Made by a program: the position numbers and the translations under genes. Shown in pieces: positions 22,615-43,429 of a DNA stretch of 64,000 nucleotides (positions are counted from its first letter, which is position 1; every line of letters starts with the position of its first letter). The stretch is from positions 62,001 through 126,000 of the IMG/VR virus record IMGVR_UViG_3300028275_000006. The stretch is one strand, 5' to 3'. Under the pieces are notes generated by a model. The model made no database searches and was not told the origin of the DNA. It was given only the letters and a program-made list of their open reading frames with translations.

Positions 22615-23196
22615 TTATGCTATGGGTCCAGCGTCTATACTTATAGGGCTCGGGTCGGTAAACGTGCCCATGTCCGTTCCAATTTCATTTAACAAATAAG
22701 TAATTGGATCGTAGTACGTAGGTGCAATGGGTCCATAGTCAAATGTATTTACCTGTCTATCTAAAAGTGTTACATCAACAAACGGGTTTTGAGTTGCAGT
22801 TCCGCCGTTTCTAATTAAACCTACAACATTTCCAGTTAAAGTGCCAGAAAATGTAGTGGCTGTAACAGTACTAATGTTATTAATAGCCTGCCCATTAAAG
22901 TCAACTGTAGCCGTTGGATGTAAATCTAACTGCAACACATCTCCTACTAATTGTAATCTTAGTGGTCCTAGCGCATCTAGTTTTCTAAGTTCTAGATTGC
23001 TGTCTGCGTTCTTTTGTTTAAAAACACCTAGTCCTGAAGTGCCTATATTTTCAGCACTAACTGGAGCATAACCGTTGTTGTACAGATATTCAAAGTTAGT
23101 TTTAACTTTTTCAAAGGCTGTACGCAGGTCGTCCCCAGTACCGTCGTTGACGACATTTCCTAGGTTAATCTCTTGTAAATCATCATATAATGCCAT
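22615..23196 (-). CDS. baseplate wedge/fibre-connector protein (T4 gp9/gp10 N-terminal-like)
   Basis: INLGNVVNDGTGDDLRTAFEKVKTNF; AAGG RBS before ATG 23196. Confidence 0.7.
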   Translation of the reverse strand: MALYDDLQEINLGNVVNDGTGDDLRTAFEKVKTNFEYLYNNGYAPVSAENIGTSGLGVFKQKNADSNLELRKLDALGPLRLQLVGDVLQLDLHPTATVDFNGQAINNISTVTATTFSGTLTGNVVGLIRNGGTATQNPFVDVTLLDRQVNTFDYGPIAPTYYDPITYLLNEIGTDMGTFTDPSPISIDAGPIA

Positions 23197-23206
23197 GTTA
23201 TTTTCC

Positions 23207-26200
23207 TTAGAATCTACCAACAACAATCTCAACTAGGCCTTCGCCTAAATCGTCTTTGTTCTCTAAACTCTTACCAATAATAGTTCCTACAGATGGAGTA
23301 TTATTAACTATTGCGTAACCTTTCTTAGCCGCAGTAACTAGAATATCACCTTTCTTAACCTTACCAAGTACTTTACATGGCAAGCGTCCTGTTAGGCCTA
23401 CTGCTAGTGGATGTTTTCCTGCTAAATCAGAGTTCATCAAATGCGCTGGTTTTTCAGAAATAACACCAGCAACTCTAGTATCGTTATGTTTGTCAGTGAC
23501 TGTAATTTCTTCATCACCACCAAATACTACAACAGTACCAGTTTCATATTCTGCATCTGACAAGTATTTTTCAGCCAAGTCAGCGTAACGAGCACTTGTA
23601 GCAGTACCATTGAATAATGTTGCGTATAGTGTGTCGGTAAATGGATTACAATAAATGCCGCCTGTGCCATATACACTATTACCGCTACCCCATAACATTT
23701 GATATGTGCTGTTACTATCGTTGTTATAGTTAATTGTAACTGTACTTGCATTACCTGCAATGTTCATTGACTGTCCGCTAATGAACGAAGCAACTTTTGC
23801 GGCTGTAGCAGAGCGATAGTAGTTATCGCCAAACTTAGCCATTATGTATGTAATGGTGCCACCACTTACATCGTCGCTACTGTTAAAGTAACTGCTGTTA
23901 ATATAACGTCCGTTGAAGTCACCGTTAACGTCACGTGCAACTAATGTGCTTCCTGTGGCCGCACTTGTTGCGTTAGTTTGGATTGTACGTGTTGTACTAC
24001 CATCGTAACTTGAACCAGCAGTGAAACTTAGGTATGTGCTTAGACCCAGTGTACCAGCCAATGTACCAGTAACAGCACCGTAGATAGTTCCACCAACACG
24101 TAGGTCGCCACTGATACCTGCACCGCCTGTAACCTGTAATGTACCAGTACCGTTGGCAGCACCTGTTACTGCTTGGTTAGCAGTTAAGGTTACTGTATCG
24201 TTAGCAGACAACAATTTAAAATAACCATTACCTCGAGTAGTTGCACCAATGTTTACGTTGTTTATTGATCCGACACTGGCCGGAGCAATAGTTACAGTAC
24301 CGGTACCACTTGGACTTAGTGTTACGTTAGCATTAGCAGGACTAAATGTTGTAGTGCTTGCTGATGTTATTGCGTTTGCACTTAAAGTACCAACTGTGGT
24401 AATAGTTGTGCCTGCTGAAGTAGTTCCAACTGCTGTTAAGAAGTCTACAGCACCGGGTGTAGTCATAGTCAGTGTAGTTCCGCTGACGCTTAAGGTCTTA
24501 TAACTACTTGAAGTTAAGTCTAACTGTGCTACAGCAACACGGCCGCTACCATCAGATTGTATCAATGAACTAGCCTGAGCACTTGTACTAATGTTTGTTG
24601 TACTGTAAGCGTTTGGACCAATAGCAGTTAAAATCATTGCACGACCATTGCTACCTACTGATCCTGGAGCAAATGACGCATTCTTAATACCATCGCCGTT
24701 GGTAACAATCTGTCCAGATGTTACTTGACGAGGATATGTAGCACTGCCTGTATTATTACCTAAATAAGTGTCGTTGGCAATATACTGTAATTTAGTTTGT
24801 AATACACCTGTAGTTGTTGAACTGGATGTTTGCAACTCAATCCAACCGTTAGTTGCAGTAAATTCTGTACTCTTGAAACTTGCTAGACCCAAATCTGCCT
24901 GTGCAATACTTGTAGCATTTGCACGAGTAGTTGCTTTATTCATGTCTAACTTACTTTGTGCAATAGCCGCACTAGAATTAACGTCTGCGTTAATAATTAC
25001 ATTAGACTTGATGTTTAAAGCAAGATTTTTAGTTCCAGGAGTCAATGAAGTTTGAATATCGCCTGTGCTAACTGTTTCAGCGTTGATCCATTTAACTCCG
25101 TTATAAACTAATAAATCATTTAAACTTCTTGCTGGACTTGTTGAAGTATCAACTCTGTCATCGCTTAGTTCTTGATTTCTAACATATAACTTGTTAGCCG
25201 CATCTGTATCAGCAGTAGGACTACCTAAGTTAGCAATAACAAATCCGCCCATGTCCATTGGATCTGGACCAGTAAATGTTAACAAACCAGCACGATCCAT
25301 GTAGCCTGGACCAATTAGTGCAGTTGGATCTAGAACGTTATTTGTACGATCCATTCCAAGACGTCTGTCAATGTAACCTTGTGTTGCCGCTTCAGTTGGT
25401 AGCGCATCGTTAGCACCGTCAGTAAATCTATCATCGTTTGAGAATTCACTAACTGTAACACCACGCTTAAATCCTAGACCGTCTAAGTTTGACAACGCAA
25501 TAGATGCCGCAAACGTTACACGACCAGTACCTTGGTCAACTGTAAAGAATCGACCTACACGGAAAATACCGTCTTGGTCTGTGGTTACATAGAAACAACG
25601 TCCTCTTGTACGTTCTGTAACTTCACGTGCTTGGTTAGGTTCTTTTGGAGCACCGTAAATCTTGCTTGGGAAGTTAGTATCGTTATAGCCTCCAGTACCA
25701 ATGTCTAAGAAGTCATGTCCTGTAACACGGCAAGTACTAATACGTACAATAACTTCTGCTGGCTCTGTGCTAGATAAACCTGCACGTAATGTTGGAGGTT
25801 CAGAAATATCCAAGTTAAAGTCTGGATCAACTGGTGTATTAATACCGCTAGCAGATGTTCCTGCTAGACACTTATCAGCGACATCTTCTATTTCAACATA
25901 AGCGTAACCGGCTAATAACCCCATGTCAGTGTAACTTAAAATTTTATGAATCTTGCCATCCCAGGCAGTAATCATATCTCCGGTATTAAGTCTGCTTTCA
26001 ATGTCAGTTTCGTTTACACGGTCGATGGCAATCTTAGTATCACCAGCAGTCGACCCCATAGTCTGTCCAACATTATCTGGATCAGCGTTAGATACATTTT
26101 CTGCATTGACTAGTAATTTTACATAATCGTAAGTTGTATCGAAGCCTAGAATACTTTCGTCTACCGCAAGGTCTTCATTTAATGGACCTTTGTTACCGTA

Positions 26201-29200
26201 TGCTAACACACGATAAACAATAGCACCTGCATCGGGATCACCGACGAATGTCAATGCAGTACTTGGACGAACCGGGTTAGTGTCATCGACTTCGTAGAAC
26301 TTAAAGTTTTGGTTACTGCGAATAATAATTGGTTGGTCATGTGACAATGCTACGGCCAAGCCGTTTGTAGCAGTATCATTATTACCGCCAGTGTTGATGT
26401 TTAGACGTAGAACGTTGCCTAGGCCCCATAGGCTAGCCAAACCGCCTGCCCATGTTCCAGGATTGGTACTGTACTCTAGTGTAACACTAGATGTTGTACT
26501 AGCGGTAGCAGTATATACACCGTTAAACCCAGAAGTTGTTGATCCACTAACTGTGTAAGGTACACCAATTCTTGGTGTATATGGTTCAGCAGTGAACGAA
26601 TATGTTACGTAATATTTTCCGCCTGTTGGCCCAGTCTTAAGTGGTGTTCCAGAAACAGACTGTGCCAAGGTACTTGAAACATCAGTTACACCTGCAACTT
26701 CGTAACGAGCAATACCGTTACCAATAATAGTTTTAACAGTGATAAAGAAGCCCGAACCTGTTCCGCCTACGTTTGTATTACTGCAACTTAAAATATCACC
26801 TTCGCTGTATCTAATACCTGCGGCAACTAAACCTACAGTAGTTACTACACCTCCTGACACAACAATGTTAGCAGTGATACCACTACCAGTTCCGCCTGTT
26901 AACGGAACATTAATATATGTGCCGTTGGTATAACCACTACCACCGATTAAACTAGTTGCGTCTAGTTCTGTAACAACGCCAGCGCCGTGGTTAATTTCAA
27001 CTTCAGATACGTTGTATGGTGAGTAATCATGTTGGTAGAAAAATACCTGTAAATCACCAACATCGTTGTCTGTGCTATAAATTCCTTGTTTGTAAACACG
27101 AGCAACCTGCATCATGTTGTCTGACAAGTTACACTTATCTGGAACTTCTAATGGATCACTACCTTCAGAAATAATACCATACTCGCCGTGTGCGTTAGAA
27201 CCGTTCAATGAACGAATCTGTCCACCGTTGTTGGCATAATAAGCAGTCCAGCAATAGTAACTGAACACAGAAACTGTTTCAATCAAACCAATGTTTGTAG
27301 CAACCAGTCCATAACCTAAGTCGTTAATCTGTGTAAAGTCATTTGAACACATACTGGTGTTACCAGCACTTAGTAGCATAAAGTCTTTTACATACTCTAT
27401 GGTAGTAGTGCCAGTGCCAAATGCACCCGGGTCACTTGGATAACGTAGTGTCATCGAAGTTAGTGTAGATGCTACACACTCTACAGCATCATTGTTATAG
27501 TTAGAGTTGCTGTTGCCAAACACTCTATAACGTGTTTTAGTTCTAGGAGCAGTAGTTCCAACGGGCGTAACAATGCTGAATACTACATCGTAAGATCCAT
27601 CCCCGACGCCCGAGTCTGCCTTGCTAGTGAAGGTAGAAATAGTATATTCTAAGTCGTTAGTTACAGGAGTAGTTGTAGAAAGAACTAATCTGTATGTTGG
27701 GTAAACGATAGGTTTGGCACCAGTTAATACTGTTGAAACATCTACTTCCGGGTCTGTAATAACTTCGTTTAATAAATCAAACAACTGTCCTGCTCGTGTA
27801 ACAAATGCAGAGCCGTCGTAGTCAGAACTGAATACCTGTGATACTCTATTCTCTACAGCAACATCGTTAATAACTTGATAATTTAATGTTGGTGGAACTT
27901 GATTCAATACAGCCTGTGCAACTTCCTTGGCATAGGCAAATGAATCTAATGTTTGTGATAATTGATTTTCTAATACAACACGGCTACTAGCAGTACCTAC
28001 ATAGTAACGCTGTGCGGCACGAATTGTTAAGTATGTTCCGCCATATAACAAGTCTGCTGAAACTGCGGCAACAATAAAGCCAACGTCTCGTGAACAAATT
28101 TCTTCATTGTAAACTAATGTGTTTGTATAATTAGCATCGATATAATTTGTTACAGCAGTTTGTAAAGTTGACTTAGCACTTTGTAGTGCAGAATTTGCAC
28201 CAGTTAAGCCAGCACTTACCCAAGCAGTACTTGGAGTAATTGTTGAAGGAACAGAACCGAGCCCAAGGTCGATAATTGTTAAAATTTCTCCAATACGCTG
28301 TCCAGCAGTAGCACTGGCAGAACTGTTACCTGGAGTACCGCGAACCTGCGCAACACCACCTTGTAATGCAGTAATAGGTAAGTCTAATGCAATGTCTTCA
28401 ACTAGACTTTGTAGATAACCATATGCGGCCAATGTTGCTGGTTTCTCAGGAGCCGCAACTTGTAGAGTTGTGTAAGAATAATAAGCCTTACCAGCAATCA
28501 ATGTTTGAATGTTACCACCGTAGGTTAGGTCGTGATATAGTGCATCTAAAATGTATTCTGTATCACGTAAGCATACAGCAGGGTCATAACTTAATCCAAC
28601 ATAGTTGTTAGAAATATATTGAATTACTTCTGCTTTAATAAATTCTCTGTTAGATTCAATCAGTGTTCTAGCACGATTATAATTTACATCGTAGCCTGTT
28701 GGATCAGGAGTTACGATTGCAGGTTCTTGAGTTAGTCCGTTAGTAATAACATCTAAGAACATATTCATGTTGGTAGTTACACTAGTAACTGCGGTAGCAC
28801 TTGCACTAACAACAGATAATATTTCATCTCTTAAGAAAGTAAATGCGTCAATAGTTGCGGCTTTTTGTACGCCAACAGCCACAGCGGCTGAAGCTCTGTA
28901 ATAAGATCTTGCCGCTGTAATTGTCTGGAAGTTGCCGCCAAACATTAAGTCGTAACCAATAGCATCAATTACATAACCCACGTCACGTTGACATGTAGCA
29001 GAATCATAGGTAAATCCTACATATTTGTTGTTAATGTAGTTAATAACTTCTGCTTTGATAAAATCTTTATTATCGACTAACAATGCACGAGCACCACGAG
29101 CACTTGGCGGATTTTCTAAAATGCCAATGAACTCGTCAAACAAATCTTGAATAGTTGCTTCTGCTAAGCCGCCATCGGTAATATCGGTATCGATATACTG

Positions 29201-32200
29201 TAGAACAGATTGTTGATATCGTACTGTTGGATCTTCGTTATTAATAACATTTAATATCAATGTTTCAATGTAGTTAATAGCCGCAAGTGTGTTGGCCAAC
29301 TGCTGGTCAATAACAATCTTAGAACTAGCACTAGCATTGAAGTATGCTAGAGCTGCCTGAACTGTTTTTAAATTACCGCTATAATAAATGTCGTGTGCAA
29401 TAGCATCGCAGATGTATCCAGTGTCACGAGCACAAGTATCTTGGTTGTAACTATATCTTTGTTGTAGATAAACTAATGTGTCAGACTTGATACTTTCTTT
29501 GTTGTTTAACAATAATGTTCTGCTGTCTGTTAACGAACCAGACACACTATAGAAAGTTGGATATTCAATAGTAGGAGCCGCTTCACGTCCGCTTAAAATA
29601 ATAGTATTAATGTAGCCCATTAACACACCTACTCTAGCAGATTCAGTTGCGCTACCTGGATTAACTAAATCAAATACCTGTGTTACAGCACTTTGTTTAG
29701 GGAACGGAACAGGAGTATTAGTAACAACTAACTGTGCAACACCACTGGCATAGGCCAATGCTTCTGTGGTTTGCAATGTTTGTCCAGGAATTTGCAAACT
29801 TCCGTTACCATCGTAATATTGATATCCGGCTTCTACAGTTGCCGAGTTACCTTCATATAGTAAGTCGTAAACAATAGAATTTAAAATGTATGCCGCATCT
29901 CGACGACACTTGTCTTCGTCGTAGACAAAGTCTGGATATTCTTCAGCAATCCAGGCAATAATTTCTTCTTTAATAAATTCAATGTTATCTAAAATAAGAT
30001 TTTTTGCATTTACTCTTGAAGTAGGAGCACCTGACGGATCTGACCATGTAATTGTATCTGATGAAATAATACCGTTAGCAATGATATCTGTTATCTCATC
30101 AAAACTTGCTTCTGCTCTTAGACGTGCAACAGAGTTACCGGCTAATACATCAGAAATTAATGTTCTTGTATAGATTAACGCATCTAAGTATTCATCTTTT
30201 TGGTCTGGAAGAATACTGTATTGTGTGCCGCGATAGTATGATTGTCCAGCACGTACAGCATTAAAGTTTGTACCTAGTGCTAGATCGTAACCTAGTGCAT
30301 CAACAATCAATCCAACGTCACGAGCACATTTGGTTTCGTTGAATGTAAATGGTGGACTTAGTTCTGTATTAATATAACCAATAACTTCTGCTTTGATAAA
30401 GTCGATGTTTCGACGAATTAATTTTCTAGCATTTCCATAGCCGTTGCCGTCATCAGTGTATGCTTCAACTTTAAAAGTTCTTCCGTCAATAACAAATGAG
30501 CAAGGAGTTGTTGGAGCACGTTCACTGCCTGTTACTAGGAATTCTGTGTCGCTGATTTTTTCTTGAATCTTAAGAGGAACGTTACCAGCAAAGCCGTCAA
30601 CATACTGTCCACCAGCAAAACGTTGTTTGTTTAGTGATCCTGCAAAAGAACCGGACTGTTGAATATATGCAGACTTGGTTAAAATTTGACCTTCTGGGTC
30701 AAGTACCATCATAAAGCCGCCGTGGCCTTGACAGGTAATCTGACGAATAATAACAGCATCGTTACATAAGAATACGTCAAGGTCTCTGTTGTTCTTTGGT
30801 TCACTTAAAATATCAGACGGGTCTGTTAGATAGTGATAACCGTATTCTGTGCTGGTTAAAGTTAATCCGTCAAATGTTTTATCTCTACGGAACCAAACGT
30901 CAACCCATGGACTGCGACTTGGGCGGTCCGCTGGACGAACAATACATCTACGCAATTCGTCACCAACGATAGCAACGTTTGGCGGGACACGAATTGGATA
31001 GTCTTCAAAATAGATACCAGATTCAACAACAATACTAATTTGGATATTTTTAACTGCTTGGTCAAACTCTAGGTTTTCGCCAGGCACAAAATCACCAATA
31101 ACATCCTGCAAGTCAAAATAGTCTTCGCCGATACTTGAACTACCATCGGAGCCATAGTATTGATAAATGAAACCCTGTGCGCCGCTGGTACGTCCAACAA
31201 CAATCTTACCGGAGACAATATCTGGTTTTGGTAATTGACCTTGGTCAACACGAGAACCACCGTTGTTAGTAAAGTAAACACGAGTAGTACCAGATGCACC
31301 AGATTCAATTCTTGTAACTTCAGAGAACGCTTCACCGCCACCGTAGGCAATTAACTGACGATAAGGACCAGTTTCCCATGGTGCATCATTTACTAATTGT
31401 TCTGCTTTTTGACAGGCTTTGTTAATACTTGCATAAGCATAAGAACGATCGCGTCCTTCTTTTCCACGCGGTGTACGTGCCTGTGTGTCGTCACCGCCTG
31501 TGGTAACGTACAAGTTAAATCTGCTTGAATAACTTGAATTATCTACATAATATTTTGTAGCGGCTTGTAAGTCATCTTCTCCGTTAGGCGTACCAGCACC
31601 TGCAAGTCCGCCTGGATGATCTGCTAAGTTTAGCACACCAGTCATATCGCCGCCAGTTTTTAATACAACTTCTGCGGCACGTGGTGCTTGGTTACCTGTG
31701 GCGTTTGCTGGCACATTTAAGTGACCAGTCATTGTGTCGCCTGTAATGTTTACATATTTGGAGTCGGCATAACCTTTGTTAATAGCAAAGGAATCTATGC
31801 TATAAAGAGTTTCGTGCTGTGTGTTGAAACTATTAACAGCAGTTTGGAAATCTGTTTGATTAATAGGACTGCGTAAGCCGCCGATTAATTGATTACGTGC
31901 ATCCAGCGCATATTGTAATTTTGGTAATGGGTCGTCCTGTAATTTAGAACTTAATGTATCAATTTTAACGGAACCGTAACTGGTAATAGTACCAGTTGCC
32001 GCACTAGTTGATAAGTTTGTTCCTGCGTTTGTATATACTAGAACATTGTCTACTGTGCCAGTTAACAATAGGGCAGAAGTAGTGTTAAATGAAGTATTGT
32101 CTGTGGACGCGATTGTAACTCGTTGTCCAGGATCTAAATTGTGGTTTGCTGAAAGTGTAATAGTGGCAACGTTGCTACTTCTTGATACACTAACAATATC

Positions 32201-32485
32201 AAAGGTTTCTTGCTCGGAATAATCAAACTGGATAGTACCGTTAGGACTGAAAAAGTCTTTGAATACTAAACTAGTACCAATAGAATTAACTACTGGAATC
32301 TTATTACCTTGTCCTACTAATGTATCAGGAGTATCGCTAAGGTCAGTGAACTTTAAAAATCCGCCTTGACCGAAAACAGCATATAACTCTTGGAAGTTTT
32401 CATTCGTTTTTCTAAACGCTTCACGGATACTATCACCAGTTCCGTCATTACCTGATACGCCGATGTCGACTATTTTACGTGCCAT
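23207..32485 (-). CDS. giant (~3,090 aa) tail/baseplate structural protein with six ~150-aa repeats and a C-terminal chaperone-like domain
   Basis: gp9/gp10-like N-terminus GNDGTGDSIREAFRKTNENF; AATKYYVD fibre motif; C-terminal ATSARYADLAEKY; GGAG RBS before ATG 32485. Confidence 0.8.
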   Translation of the reverse strand: MARKIVDIGVSGNDGTGDSIREAFRKTNENFQELYAVFGQGGFLKFTDLSDTPDTLVGQGNKIPVVNSIGTSLVFKDFFSPNGTIQFDYSEQETFDIVSVSRSSNVATITLSANHNLDPGQRVTIASTDNTSFNTTSALLLTGTVDNVLVYTNAGTNLSTSAATGTITSYGSVKIDTLSSKLQDDPLPKLQYALDARNQLIGGLRSPINQTDFQTAVNSFNTQHETLYSIDSFAINKGYADSKYVNITGDTMTGHLNVPANATGNQAPRAAEVVLKTGGDMTGVLNLADHPGGLAGAGTPNGEDDLQAATKYYVDNSSYSSRFNLYVTTGGDDTQARTPRGKEGRDRSYAYASINKACQKAEQLVNDAPWETGPYRQLIAYGGGEAFSEVTRIESGASGTTRVYFTNNGGSRVDQGQLPKPDIVSGKIVVGRTSGAQGFIYQYYGSDGSSSIGEDYFDLQDVIGDFVPGENLEFDQAVKNIQISIVVESGIYFEDYPIRVPPNVAIVGDELRRCIVRPADRPSRSPWVDVWFRRDKTFDGLTLTSTEYGYHYLTDPSDILSEPKNNRDLDVFLCNDAVIIRQITCQGHGGFMMVLDPEGQILTKSAYIQQSGSFAGSLNKQRFAGGQYVDGFAGNVPLKIQEKISDTEFLVTGSERAPTTPCSFVIDGRTFKVEAYTDDGNGYGNARKLIRRNIDFIKAEVIGYINTELSPPFTFNETKCARDVGLIVDALGYDLALGTNFNAVRAGQSYYRGTQYSILPDQKDEYLDALIYTRTLISDVLAGNSVARLRAEASFDEITDIIANGIISSDTITWSDPSGAPTSRVNAKNLILDNIEFIKEEIIAWIAEEYPDFVYDEDKCRRDAAYILNSIVYDLLYEGNSATVEAGYQYYDGNGSLQIPGQTLQTTEALAYASGVAQLVVTNTPVPFPKQSAVTQVFDLVNPGSATESARVGVLMGYINTIILSGREAAPTIEYPTFYSVSGSLTDSRTLLLNNKESIKSDTLVYLQQRYSYNQDTCARDTGYICDAIAHDIYYSGNLKTVQAALAYFNASASSKIVIDQQLANTLAAINYIETLILNVINNEDPTVRYQQSVLQYIDTDITDGGLAEATIQDLFDEFIGILENPPSARGARALLVDNKDFIKAEVINYINNKYVGFTYDSATCQRDVGYVIDAIGYDLMFGGNFQTITAARSYYRASAAVAVGVQKAATIDAFTFLRDEILSVVSASATAVTSVTTNMNMFLDVITNGLTQEPAIVTPDPTGYDVNYNRARTLIESNREFIKAEVIQYISNNYVGLSYDPAVCLRDTEYILDALYHDLTYGGNIQTLIAGKAYYSYTTLQVAAPEKPATLAAYGYLQSLVEDIALDLPITALQGGVAQVRGTPGNSSASATAGQRIGEILTIIDLGLGSVPSTITPSTAWVSAGLTGANSALQSAKSTLQTAVTNYIDANYTNTLVYNEEICSRDVGFIVAAVSADLLYGGTYLTIRAAQRYYVGTASSRVVLENQLSQTLDSFAYAKEVAQAVLNQVPPTLNYQVINDVAVENRVSQVFSSDYDGSAFVTRAGQLFDLLNEVITDPEVDVSTVLTGAKPIVYPTYRLVLSTTTPVTNDLEYTISTFTSKADSGVGDGSYDVVFSIVTPVGTTAPRTKTRYRVFGNSNSNYNNDAVECVASTLTSMTLRYPSDPGAFGTGTTTIEYVKDFMLLSAGNTSMCSNDFTQINDLGYGLVATNIGLIETVSVFSYYCWTAYYANNGGQIRSLNGSNAHGEYGIISEGSDPLEVPDKCNLSDNMMQVARVYKQGIYSTDNDVGDLQVFFYQHDYSPYNVSEVEINHGAGVVTELDATSLIGGSGYTNGTYINVPLTGGTGSGITANIVVSGGVVTTVGLVAAGIRYSEGDILSCSNTNVGGTGSGFFITVKTIIGNGIARYEVAGVTDVSSTLAQSVSGTPLKTGPTGGKYYVTYSFTAEPYTPRIGVPYTVSGSTTSGFNGVYTATASTTSSVTLEYSTNPGTWAGGLASLWGLGNVLRLNINTGGNNDTATNGLAVALSHDQPIIIRSNQNFKFYEVDDTNPVRPSTALTFVGDPDAGAIVYRVLAYGNKGPLNEDLAVDESILGFDTTYDYVKLLVNAENVSNADPDNVGQTMGSTAGDTKIAIDRVNETDIESRLNTGDMITAWDGKIHKILSYTDMGLLAGYAYVEIEDVADKCLAGTSASGINTPVDPDFNLDISEPPTLRAGLSSTEPAEVIVRISTCRVTGHDFLDIGTGGYNDTNFPSKIYGAPKEPNQAREVTERTRGRCFYVTTDQDGIFRVGRFFTVDQGTGRVTFAASIALSNLDGLGFKRGVTVSEFSNDDRFTDGANDALPTEAATQGYIDRRLGMDRTNNVLDPTALIGPGYMDRAGLLTFTGPDPMDMGGFVIANLGSPTADTDAANKLYVRNQELSDDRVDTSTSPARSLNDLLVYNGVKWINAETVSTGDIQTSLTPGTKNLALNIKSNVIINADVNSSAAIAQSKLDMNKATTRANATSIAQADLGLASFKSTEFTATNGWIELQTSSSTTTGVLQTKLQYIANDTYLGNNTGSATYPRQVTSGQIVTNGDGIKNASFAPGSVGSNGRAMILTAIGPNAYSTTNISTSAQASSLIQSDGSGRVAVAQLDLTSSSYKTLSVSGTTLTMTTPGAVDFLTAVGTTSAGTTITTVGTLSANAITSASTTTFSPANANVTLSPSGTGTVTIAPASVGSINNVNIGATTRGNGYFKLLSANDTVTLTANQAVTGAANGTGTLQVTGGAGISGDLRVGGTIYGAVTGTLAGTLGLSTYLSFTAGSSYDGSTTRTIQTNATSAATGSTLVARDVNGDFNGRYINSSYFNSSDDVSGGTITYIMAKFGDNYYRSATAAKVASFISGQSMNIAGNASTVTINYNNDSNSTYQMLWGSGNSVYGTGGIYCNPFTDTLYATLFNGTATSARYADLAEKYLSDAEYETGTVVVFGGDEEITVTDKHNDTRVAGVISEKPAHLMNSDLAGKHPLAVGLTGRLPCKVLGKVKKGDILVTAAKKGYAIVNNTPSVGTIIGKSLENKDDLGEGLVEIVVGRF
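27750..30450 (-). repeat. six tandem 140-159-aa repeats, consensus N(x)2-FIKAEVIxYI...C-x-R-D-x-G-Y-I-x-D-A-I-x-Y-D-L-x-Y-G-G-N
   Basis: Cys codons at 30326, 29906, 29432, 28991, 28571, 28094 (spacing 140/158/147/140/159 aa). Confidence 0.85.
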
Positions 32486-32515
32486 TGAATACTCCAAAAA
32501 AGACTTTGTATCCAA

Positions 32516-32868: not shown

Positions 32869-33087
32869 ATGTTGTCATTATTAAAAAAACTATTTGGCGG
32901 TAAGTCTCAAGAAACCGTAGCAGAAGCACCATACAAGGTTGAAGCACCTAAAGTGGAAGAAACTAAAGTAGAAGCACCTGCTCCAGTTGCTGAGGCACCT
33001 AAAGCAGAAGCACCTAAGAAAAAGGCCGCTGGCCGTAAACCAGCAGCCGCAAAAAAGGCTCCTGCTAAGAAAGCCCCTAAGAAGTAA
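32869..33087 (+). CDS. small Ala/Lys/Pro-rich protein
   Basis: MLSLLKKLFGG amphipathic start, EAPK repeats, histone-H1-like KKAPAKK tail. Confidence 0.7.
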   Translation: MLSLLKKLFGGKSQETVAEAPYKVEAPKVEETKVEAPAPVAEAPKAEAPKKKAAGRKPAAAKKAPAKKAPKK

Positions 33088-34096
33088 TCGCTTGTTTGTG
33101 TAGTGCAAACGAGGCTAGATTTTTAGCCTTGCTTTCGCACATAATATCAAACTGATCCCAAAAACTCAGTGCCCATTCGTTCACTGCTGTGTTCCAGTAG
33201 AAGTTCGAATGTGCTCTGAGTTTTGCTTTTTTGTGTCCACTTTCCATTAGTGAAAGTAGGGAGGGAGCGGAGTCTGTGGCATGGCCATTAAGATGCTCTT
33301 CCCGTGAAACACTATAATGTATGACAGGGCGCACACCACGCCAACTATCGATAATCCTTTTAACACGGTCGTCAGTTGCTTCAATATATTCTCCAGTATT
33401 AATCCAATGATGGTGTATGTCTAGCACCAAAGCGAGATCTTTGGCAAGTTCGAGGCTTGAGTCGATTCCCCAGGTGATTTCGTCATTTTCGATGGTGATG
33501 CAGTTTCTTGCTTCGGGGGAAAGTCTCGGGAGGGCACTTTTAATACCGGCTGGACCGGCTCTACCGGCGATGTGGACGTTGATCTTAAAGTCCTGAAATC
33601 TTTTACCATACCCCATCCATCTCGCCATATCCGCATGATACTCAAACTCCTCTATAGAACGCTGAACAATATCAGGATTGTCGCTTGCCAACACAGTAAA
33701 TTGACCAGGATGAAAACTGAGACGAACGTTGCGGGAACGAGCAATATCTCCCACTTCTGCAAAATGTTTTTGGGCGTATGTCTGCACATCATTTTCACGC
33801 CAAAACCAGCACCAAGTAGGCTCAGTGTAGACAGGAAGAATATCACTGCTAAGGCGTACCATACGTAAGTCATCATCTAATTGCCCTACCCTTTCTACTA
33901 ATAATTTAGTTGAGTTGATATTTTGTTCAAGCAAAGACCACAATTTTTCAACAGCCACATCTTTGGTTTGACGGTTAAGCCAAGCCACAGTTGTTGCTCC
34001 TGTATTGTATTTCTTACATTCATCTTTGGGTTTAATACCGTCTACTTGATCTGGACGGTCGATCCATTTACAGGCAAAGCCAATACGTTTGTTCAC
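33077..34096 (-). CDS. uvsE: UV damage endonuclease UvsE/UVDE (GTG start proposed)
   Basis: RIGFAC, RLSSDILP, RLSFHPGQF, IENDE, LDIHHHW, HYS, AHS, MCESKAK. Confidence 0.9.
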   Translation of the reverse strand: MNKRIGFACKWIDRPDQVDGIKPKDECKKYNTGATTVAWLNRQTKDVAVEKLWSLLEQNINSTKLLVERVGQLDDDLRMVRLSSDILPVYTEPTWCWFWRENDVQTYAQKHFAEVGDIARSRNVRLSFHPGQFTVLASDNPDIVQRSIEEFEYHADMARWMGYGKRFQDFKINVHIAGRAGPAGIKSALPRLSPEARNCITIENDEITWGIDSSLELAKDLALVLDIHHHWINTGEYIEATDDRVKRIIDSWRGVRPVIHYSVSREEHLNGHATDSAPSLLSLMESGHKKAKLRAHSNFYWNTAVNEWALSFWDQFDIMCESKAKNLASFALHKQAITS

Positions 34097-34124
34097 AAAA
34101 CTCTCGATAAAGTTACGATAATAT

Positions 34125-34153
34125 ATTATAGCATCGTTACTGCCAGTTGTCAA
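34125..34153 (-). promoter_or_regulatory. sigma70-type promoter for uvsE
   Basis: TTGACA-17-TATAAT. Confidence 0.8.
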
Positions 34154-34832
34154 CAATGATTTGGTCCTGGACATCTTCGGGATTTGGTGTTCCGTGGAAC
34201 GCAATTACGCTACAATCCGGGTTCATAGACGGGCTACGCACCGTCTTAAACACGTTTTTACCCTGAACCCTAATCAACTCTTCCCGCTGTCTTATTTCCC
34301 ACTTGTAGCTCTGTATCCAAGTTTCAGGGAAAAATTTTATAATACTTTTGTGTGACTGCCAAATCCAATCTTGATCACCTGGGAACTTTTTGGTTAACGC
34401 TGGATTGTTTTCCAAATCGTCCCAAATATTGCTGAAATGGTTACTGGGCCAACGCAGTACAGCACTACCTAATTTTGGTGGCACACGTCTAAACACTCTG
34501 CCTACATCTTCCAAACCAACAAAATTTCCAGGCAGGTACGAAACCAATTTGTCTATATTACCTACAATAACCATATCCAAATCAAAGAACAAATTTACAT
34601 CACCGTCTGGAAAATGTCCTTGTTTAAAGATATATGGTTTCCACCACCAACCAGAAAACAGTCCTTTGGGCAAGGGTTTAATTTTAATTGCAGGATTTAA
34701 GTTTGTAGGATCTTCAGTAAAGCAATAAAAATCAAAAGGCACAGTTAAGTGCCTTGAGACCATATTGTAAAGTTTGTTTACATATTCCGGACCGTACTTT
34801 GTACCGTGTTTTAAACTAATGACGTTTAGCAT
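34137..34832 (-). CDS. GT-A fold glycosyltransferase-like protein
   Basis: KHGTKYGPEYV, CFTED, WWWKPYIF, FFDLD (DxD), GDQDWI, FHGTPNP. Confidence 0.7.
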   Translation of the reverse strand: MLNVISLKHGTKYGPEYVNKLYNMVSRHLTVPFDFYCFTEDPTNLNPAIKIKPLPKGLFSGWWWKPYIFKQGHFPDGDVNLFFDLDMVIVGNIDKLVSYLPGNFVGLEDVGRVFRRVPPKLGSAVLRWPSNHFSNIWDDLENNPALTKKFPGDQDWIWQSHKSIIKFFPETWIQSYKWEIRQREELIRVQGKNVFKTVRSPSMNPDCSVIAFHGTPNPEDVQDQIIVDNWQ

Positions 34833-34993
34833 TACCAGTGCCTTATTACACCCGCTACAATGAATATGTTAGTTATTATATAAGTCAATACAATAACAGT
34901 TCGAATCAATGCAATCCTGTCCGCTTCTTGTTTGGTAACACCGGCTTTCTCTCCTAGTGCCTTGGCCCATAGTCTCCAAAACTTACGTACCAT
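34832..34993 (-). CDS. small membrane protein (53 aa) of the WRLWAKALG type
   Basis: Hand translation MVRKFWRLWAKALGEKAGVTKQEADRIALIRTVIVLTYIITNIFIVAGVIRHW; fills the gap between queD and the GT gene. Confidence 0.75.
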   Translation of the reverse strand: MVRKFWRLWAKALGEKAGVTKQEADRIALIRTVIVLTYIITNIFIVAGVIRHW

Positions 34994-35540
34994 CTTTATA
35001 AAAAACACTACGACTCTTAGGAGTTTCCCACCATTCGATGCTGTGAACTTTGACGCCTAATTTTTTCATTTTGACATCAACTAATTCTGCCATCCAACTA
35101 CTTAGGTGTTCCGATGTTGGAACAAAGTCTACTACCATAAATCCTTCGTAGTATTCTTGTTCAGGACCAGACATATTAGCATAATAGATTGGATGAATAT
35201 GCCAACCTGCAACGTATTCGGTTTCTGGAACATACACTGGAATTAGCTCGACTTTTTCTCCCAGCATCTTAGTAAACAGCGGATCGTTTTTATCAATAAT
35301 AAATTGATGATCAATATAAGTGTTGATCCATTTCTTTAGCCATTCTAAATGTCTAAAGTCAGTGACCATTCCAGTTTTATCTAATCCGTCGCCTGTTAAA
35401 TGAACCTGCATTTTACCTTCGTGTCCATGTAAATGTCTGCAAGCACATTTCAAGTCTGCCGCATATTCGCCGTTTAGTGTTTGTGTATGAACACGATGTC
35501 CATAACAAAATTCAAATGTTTTATCAATGATCCAAGTCAT
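34983..35540 (-). CDS. queD: 6-carboxy-5,6,7,8-tetrahydropterin synthase QueD (PTPS family)
   Basis: FCYGHRV, CRHLHGH, GMVTDF, IDHQF, PTSEHL, WETPKS. Confidence 0.88.
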   Translation of the reverse strand: MTWIIDKTFEFCYGHRVHTQTLNGEYAADLKCACRHLHGHEGKMQVHLTGDGLDKTGMVTDFRHLEWLKKWINTYIDHQFIIDKNDPLFTKMLGEKVELIPVYVPETEYVAGWHIHPIYYANMSGPEQEYYEGFMVVDFVPTSEHLSSWMAELVDVKMKKLGVKVHSIEWWETPKSRSVFYKDGT

Positions 35541-37879: not shown

Positions 37880-39814
37880 ATGCCAGCAGCCTTTTACGAT
37901 TTTTTTAGAAAAATAAGATTTAGACCCAGCGAAAGCGTTACAACTATCCCCAACGCAATTACTGTAGATACTGAAATTGAAGCAGACAGCGTCACGGATA
38001 CTGCTACCATTGTTGCTGGGCAGAATATTGCATTTAGCATTGAGGATAGTTCCACAGCAACGCCTGGACAGACAACTGATACCATTACAATTCATGGTCC
38101 AGATTATCAAACTTATGTACCGTTAGGCACAACAAAGTTACGTTTAGAGCGCGACCTAGGCGCAGAGACTAGCGATATCGAATTATATCCAGATCCACTA
38201 AGTCCAATTCTTATTACTAGAACTGGCGCAAATCAGATTACAATTGGTTCTAACAGTCCTAGTTTACCATTTAGCCAAGAACAAATTGAAGATTTATCTG
38301 CTTCACTTTTGACTAACGGAACACATACAGAGTTAACAGTTACCTATCAGGATTCCGTTACTTTGCCATCGACATTTGCTCAAAATGCAACTAGCGGCTC
38401 GGGCATTAATGCTGTATTCAATATTTCAATTATTAACAATACCTATGTGGCCAGCGTTAGCAATGGTGGTACTGGTTTTGCCGCAGGTAATACCGTAACA
38501 GTCTATGGAACTAATTTCCCAGGCGGATTGAATCCGGCCAACAATGTAACAATTACTGTAGGCTCTGTTGATGGTAGCGGAACAATTTTAACTATTACTT
38601 CTGCAACAGGAACTCCAATAGCATCAGATAACATAGATTTGGCTGTTACATCTACACTACAAAATGTTACAAGCCGCGGTGCAACAACTACATCAGCAAT
38701 TACGATTAGTAATGCTACAGGCAGTAGTAATACATCTACTGGCGCATTAAAATTAACCGCCGGCGGCCTTGCTGTATTTGAAAATGCTAACATTGGTGGG
38801 TATGTAAAAGCAACAACATTTGAAAGTACTCAGACAACTGGTACTGCTCCATTTACTGTGGCTAGCACTACCGCTGTGGCAAATTTACAAGCCGCCACTG
38901 CAAGTAAATGGCATACTGCTCGTACAGTTACATTCACAGGCGATGTAACAGGTTCATTCAGCATCGATGGATCGGCAGATGTTACTAGCGTAGCATTAAC
39001 AGTTGGCAGTGATACAGTTGCACTTGGTACAGATACTACAGGTAACTATGTTGCTACAGCCGGAGTAAGCGGTAACGGTCTATCAGGAAGTTCGAGTTCA
39101 GAAGGTGGAACATTTACAGTTAGTTCAAATGCTACTGCAAACAACACAGCATCAACTATTGTATTCCGTGATACTAACGGCGACTTTAGTGCAGGCACAA
39201 TTACAGCCACAGCGTTTACAGGACCAGCAAGTCAGGTAGCATTAACAGCAACATCGACTAATGCCGCACACTATCTAACATTTGTCGATACAACCACAGG
39301 TAACGAAAATATTAGAACTGATGTAGACTTAGCCTACAATCCTAGCACAAATGTTCTTACAGCAGGGACATTCAGTGGTATTATCAGTGGTAGTACAGTC
39401 AGTGCAAGTAGTACACTTAGCATTGGCACTAGCACAATTGAAACGGTTTCAGTTAACCCAGCGGCACTTACTGGCGCAACAACATTAGATTGCAAAACAA
39501 ATAGTGTGTTTTACTATTCCTCTAATGCAGCCGCAAACTGGACACTGAACTTCCGTGGTGACGGAAGTACAACAATGAATACATTCTTAACCACAGGACA
39601 GAGTGTAACAGTAGTATTGCTAGCCACACAAGGCGGCACAGCATACTATCCAACAGCGTTTACTGTCGATGGATCTGCCGTTACTCCTAAATGGTTAGGC
39701 GGTGCCGCACCGACAGGCGGTAATGCTAGTAGCATTGACTCATATTCATTTACAATTATTAAAACAGCCGCAAGTACATATACAATTATTGCTAGTCAGG
39801 CTAGATTTGCTTAA
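37880..39814 (+). CDS. tail fibre-like protein
   Basis: Thr/Ser/Gly-rich; TARTVTFTGDVTGS, STIVFRDTNGDFSAGTITA fibre motifs. Confidence 0.7.
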   Translation: MPAAFYDFFRKIRFRPSESVTTIPNAITVDTEIEADSVTDTATIVAGQNIAFSIEDSSTATPGQTTDTITIHGPDYQTYVPLGTTKLRLERDLGAETSDIELYPDPLSPILITRTGANQITIGSNSPSLPFSQEQIEDLSASLLTNGTHTELTVTYQDSVTLPSTFAQNATSGSGINAVFNISIINNTYVASVSNGGTGFAAGNTVTVYGTNFPGGLNPANNVTITVGSVDGSGTILTITSATGTPIASDNIDLAVTSTLQNVTSRGATTTSAITISNATGSSNTSTGALKLTAGGLAVFENANIGGYVKATTFESTQTTGTAPFTVASTTAVANLQAATASKWHTARTVTFTGDVTGSFSIDGSADVTSVALTVGSDTVALGTDTTGNYVATAGVSGNGLSGSSSSEGGTFTVSSNATANNTASTIVFRDTNGDFSAGTITATAFTGPASQVALTATSTNAAHYLTFVDTTTGNENIRTDVDLAYNPSTNVLTAGTFSGIISGSTVSASSTLSIGTSTIETVSVNPAALTGATTLDCKTNSVFYYSSNAAANWTLNFRGDGSTTMNTFLTTGQSVTVVLLATQGGTAYYPTAFTVDGSAVTPKWLGGAAPTGGNASSIDSYSFTIIKTAASTYTIIASQARFA

Positions 39815-39823
39815 GGTTTAACA

Positions 39824-43098: not shown

Positions 43099-43129
43099 TT
43101 TTGCTCCTGTTAATTAACTTAATAAACAT

Positions 43130-43158
43130 ATTATATAGTCACTCTTCCGAAATGTCAA
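43130..43158 (-). promoter_or_regulatory. sigma70-type promoter
   Basis: TTGACA-17-TATAAT. Confidence 0.8.
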
Positions 43159-43429
43159 CTCCGCTCCAATACAGAACAAACCAATCCAAATCCTTTTTAT
43201 TCTTAAACCAAAATTGGGTATAGCTCATTCTGCGAGCTCTTTTGGGCCAAATATACGTCTTAAACGTATTGTAACACCAATTACTTATATTTTGGTAAGT
43301 AGATTCGCTAAACGGTTCTTCAAACCCGTCCCATTCCGGAAAGAGTTCTTGTTGTCCACTTTGGGTAACATAATAAACGTCAGCAGTCCAAAACCCGTCT
43401 CTTTTGTCGATTCGGAACTGTGGTTTCAT
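43139..43429 (-). CDS. hypothetical protein
   Basis: 96-aa ORF in operon. Confidence 0.6.
   Translation of the reverse strand: MKPQFRIDKRDGFWTADVYYVTQSGQQELFPEWDGFEEPFSESTYQNISNWCYNTFKTYIWPKRARRMSYTQFWFKNKKDLDWFVLYWSGVDISEE

What the first reader, a model, noticed from the sequence alone, without database searches (positions are those of the whole stretch)
27750..30450. Six phycobiliprotein-like Cys-x-Arg-Asp repeats inside a giant tail protein
Seen: six helical-looking repeats of 140-159 aa with KCARDVGLIVDALGYDL, KCRRDAAYILNSIVYDL, TCARDTGYICDAIAHDI, TCQRDVGYVIDAIGYDL, VCLRDTEYILDALYHDL and ICSRDVGFIVAAVSADL. The 140/158/147/140/159 spacing suggests a duplicated triplet. Known: the bilin-attachment helix of phycobiliproteins reads KCARDIGYYLR/ACLRD (Cys84, Arg86, Asp87) in a globin-fold domain of similar size. 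Inference: the virion may display globin/phycobilin-like domains that bind a tetrapyrrole (light or redox sensing, photoprotection, host binding). The window has no photosynthesis genes suggesting a cyanophage. Similar repeats may already be present in other large phage structural proteins.
Basis: partly seen in the sequence, partly recalled or inferred. Interest (0 to 1): 0.7.

Follow-up and report, generated by a model that had tools for sequence, protein, structure and literature searches.

The report
Phycobiliprotein-like bilin domains in phage fibre
A giant baseplate fibre of a freshwater jumbo phage carries six domains with the fold and pigment-attachment motif of cyanobacterial phycobiliproteins, and the same phage encodes the enzymes that make such a pigment, so the virus particle may be pigmented.

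Summary
One 3,102-aa ORF (window 23207..32515, minus strand) holds six 140-170-aa repeats, each with one Cys-x-Arg-Asp motif. Composition predicts 0.055 such motifs.

An AlphaFold model of one repeat (pLDDT 94) superposes on phycobiliproteins at Z 15.6 and 1.7 A rmsd. It covers helices A to H but lacks the N-terminal X-Y hairpin. A profile-profile comparison with 134 cyanobacterial phycobiliproteins gives 93.5% probability (E 2e-7).

The repeat family is large: at least 1,488 protein clusters, with up to 37 repeats per protein. Across 1,809 copies Cys, Arg and Asp are 96-98% conserved and are lost together.

The phage lacks psbA, hli, nblA and cpeT, and its clamp loader is closest to PA5oct-like jumbo phages. 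A second contig of the same phage carries overlapping heme oxygenase and PcyX bilin reductase genes about 7 kb beyond the end of the window's record. The cassette and the repeats co-occur in 5 of 6 near-complete relatives.

My best reading (about 0.55) is that the fibre domains covalently bind a phage-made bilin. Chromophore binding itself is untested. Pelagiphage Mosig is a counter-example: it has the cassette but no such domain. I found no paper describing these domains in phage fibres.

The parts
23207..32515 (-). Giant baseplate-attached fibre gene. The ORF as listed is 3,102 aa from a TTG start; the probable real start is the ATG at 32485, giving 3,092 aa.
   Evidence: open frame. (GGAG 8 nt upstream of the ATG at 32485). 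(PHROG tail-fibre and virion-structural families along its whole length).
31976..32485 (-). N-terminal baseplate connector module (aa 11-180), like the N-terminus of T4 gp9/gp10.
   Evidence: Pfam PF07880 T4_gp9_10_N, aa 13-50, E 8e-5, 23.2 bits against a cut-off of 25. phrog_677 'baseplate wedge tail fiber protein connector', aa 11-180, E 6.6e-8.
30023..30442 (-). Phycobiliprotein-like repeat 1 (aa 692-831), CxRD at Cys730 (KCARD).
29543..30019 (-). Phycobiliprotein-like repeat 2 (aa 833-991), CxRD at Cys870 (KCRRD).
   Evidence: Pfam PF00502 E 0.054.
29105..29536 (-). Phycobiliprotein-like repeat 3 (aa 994-1137), CxRD at Cys1028 (TCARD).
28685..29104 (-). Phycobiliprotein-like repeat 4 (aa 1138-1277), CxRD at Cys1175 (TCQRD). 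This is the repeat that was modelled.
   Evidence: Pfam PF00502 E 0.001, 19.5 bits against a cut-off of 22.2. AF2 pLDDT 94.2, pTM 0.89. Foldseek and VIA-align matches to phycobiliproteins.
28208..28684 (-). Phycobiliprotein-like repeat 5 (aa 1278-1436), CxRD at Cys1315 (VCLRD).
   Evidence: In 81-85% identical relatives the Cys and Asp of this repeat are replaced (Y-x-K/R-N; Arg kept in one of five).
27701..28207 (-). Phycobiliprotein-like repeat 6 (aa 1437-1605), CxRD at Cys1474 (ICSRD).
23666..27700 (-). Distal fibre shaft and probable receptor-binding region (aa 1606-2950). It is a mosaic with tail-fibre proteins of Pelagibacter phage Mosig and of Synechococcus and Prochlorococcus myoviruses.
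   Evidence: tblastn, 39-47% identity over pieces of aa about 1693-2387. phrog_9851 and phrog_5342 tail fibre families.
23207..23635 (-). Conserved C-terminal module (aa about 2961-3102), shared with PA5oct-like and Atu_ph07 jumbo phages. It may be a fibre-end or chaperone-like domain.
   Evidence: tblastn, 41-46% identity to PA5oct-group and Atu_ph07 proteins. phrog_22593 and phrog_19602. No Pfam match.

Best explanation
The six repeats are globin-type domains of the bilin-binding phycobiliprotein/BBAG superfamily. They keep helices A, B, E, F, G and H, lack the X-Y hairpin, and are strung in tandem in the proximal part of a giant fibre that plugs into the baseplate through a gp9/gp10-like N-terminus.

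Shown:
- The fold and the homology.
- The Cys-x-Arg-Asp motif at the position of the phycobiliprotein Cys84 attachment site, near-universally conserved and lost as a unit.
- A heme oxygenase plus PcyX-type bilin reductase cassette in this phage and in most near-complete relatives.

Inferred:
- During late infection the phage enzymes turn host heme into biliverdin and then into a reduced bilin (phycoerythrobilin-type if the enzyme behaves like characterised PcyX).
- Each repeat binds one bilin. The Cys forms a thioether to ring A, and Asp and Arg hold the pyrrole nitrogens and a propionate, as in phycobiliproteins.
- No CpeT (T-type) lyase is encoded (the only lyase family searched), so attachment would be autocatalytic, as in BBAGs and the ApcE domain. 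The fibre would then be a biliprotein.

What the pigment does is the least certain step. It may stabilise the helical beads as a structural cofactor, or make fibre behaviour light-dependent.
For: Fold:
- AF2 pLDDT 94.2, pTM 0.89.
- The top 50 Foldseek PDB hits are all phycobiliproteins or their derivatives (ApcE bilin domain, PE/PC alpha, smURFP), TM 0.6-0.74.
- VIA-align gives Z 15.6 and rmsd 1.6-1.7 A over 119 residues; model residues 1-121 match phycobiliprotein residues 36-177.

Sequence:
- hhalign of 95 diverse repeats against 134 cyanobacterial phycobiliproteins gives 93.5% probability and E 2.3e-7 over 91 columns, with CxRD aligned to CxRD.
- 18 of the 20 PDB profile hits are phycocyanin alpha chains.
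- Many homologues carry a precomputed PF00502 hit.

Site:
- In 1,809 full-length copies Cys is 96%, Arg 96% and Asp 98% conserved, although the sampled copies are under 35% identical overall.
- Asp is never lost while Cys is present (0 of 1,731) but is lost in 31 of 78 Cys-less copies. Arg is lost in 24 of 1,731 copies against 44 of 78 (Fisher p about 1e-46 and 1e-49).
- Cys is mostly replaced by Phe or Tyr (48 of 78). The Cys-less copies fall into 58 clusters at 50% identity.
- 1,481 of 1,809 copies have this as their only Cys.
- Rockwell et al. 2023 (PMC10151467) state that CXRD is the phycobiliprotein chromophore-binding motif and that BBAGs with it self-attach bilins without lyases.

Pigment supply:
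- Contig G027 is the same phage: 100% identity over the fibre locus and 99.987% over the last 7.6 kb of G000.
- It carries overlapping FDBR (60.6 bits) and heme oxygenase (82.8 bits) genes.
- The FDBR matches PcyX structure 5OWG at E 1.6e-69.
- Three of 4 genomes that are at least 90% complete and were picked by the fibre have the cassette. Both genomes that are at least 90% complete and were picked by PcyX have 12 repeats each, and all four PcyX contigs that are at least 70% complete have 9-12 repeats.
- The PcyX genes of these phages are only 44-56% identical to one another, so both traits persist over long divergence.
Against: - No chromophore has been observed and the model has no ligand. 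I could not inspect whether a pocket exists.
- Pelagibacter phage Mosig has the HO-PcyX cassette but no such domain, so the cassette does not need these fibres.
- One 93%-complete relative (G002) has 21 repeats and no cassette.
- Co-occurrence was measured inside one jumbo-phage clade, plus cyanomyoviruses as a second lineage, so it may partly reflect shared ancestry.
- The cassette lies about 72 kb from the fibre gene, next to chaperone genes, not in the structural module.
- True phycobiliproteins usually need lyases, and no CpeT homologue was found.
- The window's own repeats stay under Pfam's PF00502 cut-off, and only 2 of 95 diverse repeats hit it at E of 0.01 or less.
- I know of no report of coloured phage particles.
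Confidence: 0.55

Rival explanations
1. Purely structural spacer. An ancestral phycobiliprotein/BBAG-type globin was captured and multiplied as a compact helical 'bead' that sets fibre length and stiffness. No chromophore is bound. Cys, Arg and Asp persist for folding or for contacts between domains or chains, such as Arg-Asp salt bridges.
For: The copy number varies widely between relatives (1 to 37 per protein), as expected of a length-setting module. Some copies have lost the triad yet are retained. G002 has 21 copies and no bilin cassette. Many cyanomyoviruses with the domain lack bilin genes, according to a review (PMC10452541). Fibres of other phages are built from repeated non-enzymatic modules (general knowledge).
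Against: In phycobiliproteins these three residues have ligand-binding roles, not structural ones (PMC10151467). Conservation of 96-98% for a single Cys in copies under 35% identical is hard to explain by packing, where Ala, Ser or Val would serve. When Cys is lost it is replaced by bulky Phe or Tyr and the partners decay, which is the pattern of a filled-in ligand pocket. The phage carries a bilin pathway that otherwise has no acceptor.
Confidence: 0.3
2. The domains bind something other than a bilin. Candidates are a metal through the Cys, another small molecule, or a host surface component, in which case the repeats would act in adhesion.
For: The fibre context fits adhesion. The 100% conserved Asp52 and 99% conserved Tyr68 have no counterpart in phycobiliproteins and could form a different site. 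Mosig shows that the bilin cassette can serve other ends.
Against: The conserved triad is exactly the bilin triad, aligned in register with phycobiliproteins. The repeats sit in the proximal part of the fibre, while the mosaic, host-range-like part is distal. No second Cys or His is conserved that could build a metal site.
Confidence: 0.1
3. Heme-binding sensor globin. The repeats are ordinary globins that bind heme and sense oxygen or redox state.
For: AlphaFold DB cluster hits include globin-coupled sensors (RsbR N-terminal domain, DosC, HisK-N-like), TM 0.55-0.68.
Against: No conserved His is available as a proximal heme ligand among positions that are over 50% conserved. Solved phycobiliproteins match far better (Z about 15, rmsd 1.7 A) and fill the top of both PDB rankings. 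Sequence profiles hit phycocyanins, not heme globins.
Confidence: 0.03

Closest known systems
Cyanobacterial and algal phycobiliproteins (Pfam PF00502: CpcA/CpcB, PE, APC, and the phycobiliprotein-like domain of ApcE)
   Same: The globin-type helix arrangement A-B-E-F-G-H is the same (Z 15.6, rmsd 1.7 A). The K-C-x-R-D-x-G-Y motif sits on helix E in register with the Cys84 bilin attachment site. Profile-profile homology is 93.5%.
   Different: There is no X-Y hairpin, so the alpha/beta heterodimer interface is missing. The domains occur as 1-37 tandem copies inside 2,000-6,000-aa virion proteins rather than as 160-aa subunits. Identity is about 16%. Asp52 and Tyr68 are invariant here and absent from phycobiliproteins. 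There is no phycobilisome or photosynthetic context. The window's repeats fall below Pfam's gathering score.
BBAGs, the bilin biosynthesis-associated globins of heterotrophic bacteria (Rockwell, Martin and Lagarias 2023, PMC10151467)
   Same: Both are distant phycobiliprotein homologues outside photosynthesis, some with CXRD. Both are encoded in genomes that also encode a PcyA-family reductase. BBAGs attach bilins without lyases, which is what a phage without a CpeT homologue would need.
   Different: BBAGs are small cellular proteins encoded next to the reductase gene. Here the domains are tandem arrays in a fibre about 72 kb from the cassette. I had no BBAG sequences, so I made no direct comparison.
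Giant tail-fibre and baseplate proteins of T4-like cyanophages (S-PM2 p091, P-HM2 gp7; PHROG 4527, 5342, 701)
   Same: They contain the same repeat family. S-PM2 has 9 copies in two proteins, with KCRRDIGYF, and P-HM2 has 5. All 117 isolate records with a tblastn match are cyanophages (Synechococcus 97, Cyanophage 11, Prochlorococcus 8) except one named only 'Marine'. BFVD structural matches are to their tail or structural proteins.
   Different: Those proteins are annotated only as tail fibre, structural or baseplate wedge, with no mention of a phycobiliprotein-like domain. The window's phage is a psbA-less jumbo phage whose clamp loader is closest to Pseudomonas phage PA5oct at 49% identity.
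Phage hemO-pcyX cassettes of aquatic myoviruses (PDB 5OWG PcyX; PMC11480375)
   Same: The window's phage has the same overlapping two-gene cassette. Its FDBR matches 5OWG at E 1.6e-69 and is 50% identical to that of Pelagibacter phage Mosig.
   Different: The published cassettes have no known acceptor protein. The authors mention phytochromes or BBAGs as possibilities. Here a candidate acceptor is encoded by the phage itself. Mosig lacks that candidate.

Membership tests
Phycobiliprotein (PF00502) | Globin-like fold with helices A, B, E, F, G, H | tested here: met
   AF2 pLDDT 94.2. VIA-align Z 15.6, rmsd 1.6-1.7 A over 119 residues. The top 50 Foldseek PDB hits and top 50 VIA-align entries are phycobiliproteins or proteins derived from them, plus one entry titled only 'Bacterial fluorescent protein'.
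Phycobiliprotein (PF00502) | N-terminal X-Y helical hairpin that builds the alpha/beta monomer | tested here: not met
   The model aligns to phycobiliprotein residues 36-177 only. The 140-aa repeat period leaves no room for the hairpin.
Phycobiliprotein (PF00502) | Cys-x-Arg-Asp chromophore site on helix E (Cys84 equivalent) | tested here: met
   All six repeats have it. It aligns in register with CxRD of CpcA/CpcB in the HMM and hhalign alignments. It is 96-98% conserved in 1,809 copies.
Phycobiliprotein (PF00502) | Score above Pfam's gathering threshold | tested here: not met
   The best repeat scores 19.5 bits against a cut-off of 22.2. Only 2 of 95 diverse repeats reach E of 0.01 or less. 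Many multi-repeat homologues do carry a precomputed PF00502 hit.
Phycobiliprotein (PF00502) | Covalently bound bilin | not testable with these tools
   This needs expression with a bilin pathway, or analysis of virions.
Phycobiliprotein (PF00502) | Assembly into (alpha-beta)3 discs and phycobilisome rods for light harvesting | not tested
   This is unlikely given the missing hairpin and the fibre context. A homotrimer prediction gave no verdict.
BBAG / wider bilin-binding globin clade | Distant phycobiliprotein homologue encoded together with a PcyA-family bilin reductase | tested here: met
   HO and PcyX are in the same phage genome but not adjacent, about 72 kb away. The two co-occur in 5 of 6 relatives that are at least 90% complete.
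BBAG / wider bilin-binding globin clade | Lyase-independent self-attachment of bilins | not testable with these tools
   Consistent with the absence of a CpeT-type lyase in 28 related contigs and in G000. S-type and E/F-type lyases were not searched.
T4 gp9/gp10-type baseplate-attached fibre | gp9/gp10-like N-terminal connector domain | tested here: inconclusive
   PF07880 scores 23.2 bits against a cut-off of 25, E 8e-5. phrog_677 'baseplate wedge tail fiber protein connector' matches aa 11-180 at E 6.6e-8.
Cyanophage | Photosynthesis or host-takeover genes typical of cyanophages (psbA, hli, nblA, cpeT) | tested here: not met
   None was found in the 270-kb record. psbA was found in 0 of 28 related contigs, including four that are at least 90% complete. 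The host is unknown.

The most novel reading that the evidence does not exclude
Phage particles of two unrelated lineages, aquatic jumbo phages and T4-like cyanomyoviruses, carry covalently pigmented biliprotein fibres. The pigment would come from the phage's own hemO/pcyX (or pebS, pcyA) genes or from the host. These fibres would act as a virion-borne photoreceptor or photoprotectant. This would explain two things at once: why phages of non-phycobilisome hosts carry bilin synthesis genes, and how adsorption of S-PM2, P-HM1 and P-HM2 depends on light without host photosynthesis.
Probability: 0.2. Interest if true: 0.95.

Novelty: new variant of a known kind. Interest (0 to 1): 0.85.

Why it matters
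Two questions have stood open for about twenty years.

1. Why do phages carry functional bilin-synthesis genes when their hosts have no phycobilisomes? This applies to Prochlorococcus phages (PMC1079782, PMC2984593) and to phages of heterotrophs such as SAR11. The 2024 study of hemO-pcyA/X cassettes explicitly leaves the purpose and the acceptor unknown (PMC11480375).

2. What makes adsorption of several cyanomyoviruses light-dependent yet independent of host photosynthesis? [quoted passage not shown]

A phage-encoded array of phycobiliprotein-type domains with an intact bilin attachment site, sitting in baseplate fibres, is a concrete candidate for both questions. It occurs in S-PM2 and P-HM2, which can be grown, so it can be tested directly.

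If bilin binding is confirmed, it would be the first pigment-bearing virion structure that I know of, and a new natural source of compact self-labelling fluorescent domains. If it is refuted, the domain remains a clear case of a light-harvesting fold reused as a fibre building block. It would also give a usable annotation for more than 1,400 clusters of 'hypothetical' giant phage proteins.

Tried and rejected
- Homotrimer prediction of one repeat (complex prediction, 3 copies with alignment A2) returned 'no answer', score 0.00. It is not evidence either way.
- The search for related loci with alignments A1 and A2 failed because there was no conserved 7-10-column stretch. Single proteins were used instead.
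- megablast of the gene against phage records found no match.
- The search of the window's own 270-kb record for heme oxygenase and FDBR was negative. This turned out to reflect an incomplete record (71% complete), not absence.
- Reading the phage as a cyanophage was rejected for lack of psbA, hli, nblA and cpeT, and because the clamp loader is closest to PA5oct-like jumbo phages. Mosaic matches of the fibre genes to cyanophage fibres are not enough to name a host.
- The expectation that every phage with hemO-pcyX has the domain was rejected by Mosig.
- The ESM Atlas fold search and the AlphaFold DB clusters gave only generic helical or sensor-globin matches.
- RNA libraries contain the gene, but transcription is not shown because DNA carry-over is possible.
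- Ten literature searches found no description of phycobiliprotein-like domains in phage fibres. The library lacks most subscription journals. Gasper et al. 2017 on phage CpeT could not be read.

Full report
**1. The observation**

The finding lies inside a single minus-strand ORF, window 23207..32515, of 3,102 aa. From the protein's composition 0.055 such motifs are expected, and 20,000 shuffles never produced more than two.

Aligning the six units (27-37% pairwise identity) leaves C, R, D, a second Asp, an Ala and a Tyr invariant. The repeats occupy about 27701..30442. The proposed 'duplicated triplet' is only weakly visible. Repeats 1 and 4 share the short form and are the closest pair, but the pairs 2/5 and 3/6 are no closer than other pairs. 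The real start is probably the ATG at 32485, which has a GGAG upstream.

**2. What the protein is**

- Residues 11-180 resemble the N-terminal connector of T4 gp9/gp10-type baseplate proteins. Pfam PF07880 scores just under its cut-off, and phrog_677 gives E 6.6e-8.
- The repeat block and the rest of the protein match PHROG families labelled only 'tail fiber', 'short tail fiber' or 'virion structural protein'.
- The region after the repeats is a mosaic with tail-fibre proteins of Pelagibacter phage Mosig and of Synechococcus and Prochlorococcus myoviruses.
- The last 150 residues or so are shared with PA5oct-like and Atu_ph07 jumbo phages.
- Neighbouring genes encode further fibre and baseplate-like proteins.

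So this is a giant baseplate-attached fibre, with the repeats in its proximal third.

**3. What the repeat is**

- The window's own repeats hit Pfam 'Phycobilisome protein' (PF00502) only weakly. The best is 19.5 bits, E 0.001, against a cut-off of 22.2.
- A profile of the six repeats, and then of 95 diverse homologous repeats, searched against all PDB sequences returns almost only phycocyanin alpha chains (18 of 20 hits). The alignment runs from helix B through the CxRD helix.
- I fetched 134 distinct cyanobacterial phycobiliprotein sequences from genome contigs and compared profiles. hhalign gives 93.5% probability and E 2.3e-7 over 91 columns, with CxRD on CxRD.
- AlphaFold2 with the 95-sequence alignment folds repeat 4 with pLDDT 94.2 and pTM 0.89 into six helices.
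- The top 50 Foldseek matches in the PDB are all phycobiliproteins or engineered derivatives: the ApcE bilin-binding domain, phycoerythrin and phycocyanin alpha, and smURFP.
- VIA-align gives Z 15.6 and rmsd 1.6-1.7 A over 119 residues. Model residues 1-121 lie on phycobiliprotein residues 36-177.

The domain is therefore the phycobiliprotein globin core without the N-terminal X-Y hairpin.

**4. How widespread it is**

- An exhaustive profile search finds 1,488 representative proteins at E of 1e-3 or less (644 at 1e-30 or less). Most are 1,000-6,400 aa long, with up to 37 repeats each.
- Many relatives already carry a precomputed PF00502 hit, yet all are named 'hypothetical'.
- Among 50,697 isolate-type phage records, tblastn finds the repeat block in 117. 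These are all Synechococcus, Prochlorococcus or 'Cyanophage' records except one named only 'Marine', in genes annotated as tail fibre, short tail fibre or baseplate wedge.
- A profile search finds 9 copies in two giant proteins of S-PM2, with KCRRDIGYF, and 5 copies in P-HM2.
- BFVD structural matches are to the same cyanophage tail proteins.
- Ten full-text searches found no paper that describes this domain in phage fibres.

**5. Is the CxRD site under selection as a site?**

I located 3,490 repeat copies in 259 fetched proteins and examined the 1,809 full-length ones.

- Cys is 96% conserved, Arg 96% and Asp 98%, although a sample of 95 copies is under 35% identical overall.
- 1,481 copies have this as their only cysteine.
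- The three residues are coupled. Asp is never lost when Cys is present (0 of 1,731) but is lost in 31 of 78 Cys-less copies. Arg is lost in 24 of 1,731 copies against 44 of 78.
- Cys is mostly replaced by Phe or Tyr (48 of 78).
- The Cys-less copies fall into 58 clusters at 50% identity, so these are many separate events. One example is repeat 5 of 81-85% identical relatives of the window protein, which reads Y-x-K/R-N.
- Rockwell et al. 2023 state that CXRD is the phycobiliprotein chromophore-binding motif: Cys forms the thioether, and Arg and Asp hydrogen-bond the bilin. They also state that proteobacterial BBAG globins with this motif attach bilins without lyases (PMC10151467).
- No conserved His exists that could hold heme.

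**6. The phage and its pigment pathway**

- The window is part of a 270,181-bp IMG/VR virus record estimated 71% complete. It comes from riverine metagenomes and has 32 tRNAs.
- It holds 16 CxRD domains in two giant proteins, plus one degenerate copy in a third.
- It has no psbA, hli, nblA, cpeT, FDBR or heme oxygenase.
- Its clamp loader is closest to Pseudomonas jumbo phage PA5oct at 49% identity. It is not a typical cyanophage.
- I collected 28 long viral contigs (80-331 kb) that carry related fibre genes. psbA is present in 0 of 28 and CpeT in 0 of 28.
- Heme oxygenase and a ferredoxin-dependent bilin reductase occur together, as adjacent genes, in 6 of the 28. That includes 3 of the 4 contigs that are at least 90% complete.
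- One of the six, G027 (212,542 bp), is the window's own phage. Its fibre locus is 100% identical, and its positions 150001-157605 match the last 7,605 bp of the window's record at 99.987%.
- The cassette lies about 7.3 kb beyond the end of that record. The FDBR is 226 aa (60.6 bits) and overlaps the 184-aa heme oxygenase (82.8 bits). ClpS, Hsp20, DnaK and CsgG/CsgF homologues lie nearby.
- The reductase is of the PcyX type: E 1.6e-69 to PDB 5OWG, and 50% identical to that of Pelagibacter phage Mosig.
- In the reverse direction, among contigs found with PcyX, all four that are at least 70% complete hold 9-12 phycobiliprotein-like domains, including both that are at least 90% complete.
- The PcyX proteins of these phages are only 44-56% identical, so the pairing has persisted through long divergence.

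**7. Counter-evidence**

- Mosig has hemO-pcyX, sitting between its tail-fibre and neck genes, but no detectable copy of the domain.
- G002 is 93% complete, has 21 copies and has no cassette.
- The co-occurrence is measured mainly inside one clade.
- The cassette is not next to the fibre gene.
- No pigment has been seen, and I could not inspect the model for a pocket.
- The trimer prediction gave no verdict.

**8. Interpretation**

Shown:
- A phycobiliprotein/BBAG-type globin domain with an intact, selectively maintained bilin-attachment triad.
- Multiplication of that domain in virion fibres of two unrelated phage lineages.
- A phage-encoded route from heme to a reduced bilin in the window's phage.

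Inferred, at about 0.55: the domains covalently bind that bilin, probably autocatalytically.

Speculative, at about 0.2: the pigment gives the fibre a light-related function. Published work records that adsorption of S-PM2, P-HM1 and P-HM2 needs light but not host photosynthesis, and that light-sensitive tail fibres are one unexplained possibility (PMC6628666; PMC2984593). It also records that the benefit of phage bilin genes in hosts without phycobilisomes is unclear (PMC1079782; PMC2984593; PMC11480375).

The main rival (about 0.3) is a chromophore-free structural bead.

**9. Classification**

This is not a bona fide phycobiliprotein. It has no X-Y hairpin, scores below Pfam's threshold and has no phycobilisome context. 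It is a new branch of the bilin-binding globin superfamily in a new architecture. I rate it a new variant of a known kind, with high interest because the decisive experiments are simple and culturable phages carry the domain.

Noticed in passing
Own genome G000:C1 67906-79413 (-) and 79462-87474 (-), outside the window: There are two more giant proteins. One, of 3,835 aa, has about 11 phycobiliprotein-like repeats and 10 CxRD sites. The other, of 2,670 aa, has one degenerate repeat without CxRD. The phage therefore carries 16 intact sites in all.
   Followed up: partly
G027 (same phage), locus L273 14886-16113 (-), about 7.3 kb beyond the end of G000: Overlapping PcyX-type bilin reductase and heme oxygenase genes are flanked by ClpS, Hsp20 and DnaK (Hsp70) homologues.
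   Followed up: yes
G027, locus L273 9739-11451 (-): The phage encodes homologues of the curli secretion components CsgG (E 1e-46, with a C-terminal SH3 domain) and CsgF, and nearby a Bax-inhibitor-1 family membrane protein. These suggest a Gram-negative host. Their role in a phage is unexplained.
   Followed up: no
G000:C1 239723-252576, just downstream of the window: A cluster of 32 tRNA genes includes one that ARAGORN calls tRNA-Pyl with anticodon CTA, which would be a possible amber suppressor. No sign of TAG recoding was needed to read the genes examined.
   Followed up: no
window 5475..7715 (-): A 746-aa AAA+ 'ATP-dependent protease' (phrog_4871, E 1.9e-250). Together with ClpS, Hsp20 and DnaK elsewhere in the genome, this points to a phage-encoded proteostasis set.
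   Followed up: no
window 22615..23232 (-): A 205-aa ORF immediately downstream of the giant gene also begins with a gp9/gp10-like connector motif (phrog_958 and phrog_677, aa 20-53). It may be a second, short baseplate-attached protein.
   Followed up: no
window 37880..39814 (+) and 39824..41905 (+): Two fibre-like genes on the opposite strand have mosaic matches to tail-fibre proteins of Synechococcus phages (S-CBS4, BUCT-ZZ01, S-MbCM6) and of Roseobacter and Flavobacterium phages. This shows module exchange across phages of different hosts and does not identify the host.
   Followed up: partly
window 33077..35540 (-): Between the fibre genes lie an endonuclease (phrog_8420, E 8e-80), a glycosyltransferase and a QueD-like 6-pyruvoyl-tetrahydropterin synthase.
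   Followed up: no
Relatives P0013, P0015, P0019, P0021, P0022 (repeat 5) and P0012 (repeat 2): In proteins 81-88% identical to the window's, single repeats have lost the site: C to Y and D to N, with R to K in four of the five repeat-5 copies; in P0012 repeat 2, C to Y and R to K with Asp kept. The window keeps all six. These are recent, repeat-specific losses of the site.
   Followed up: partly
Pelagibacter phage Mosig MT647606.1, record 39650-46756 (locus L274): In Mosig the hemO-pcyX cassette sits inside the structural module, between tail-fibre and neck genes, next to a ferrochelatase and four 2OG-Fe(II) oxygenase genes. The genome has no phycobiliprotein-like repeat.
   Followed up: yes
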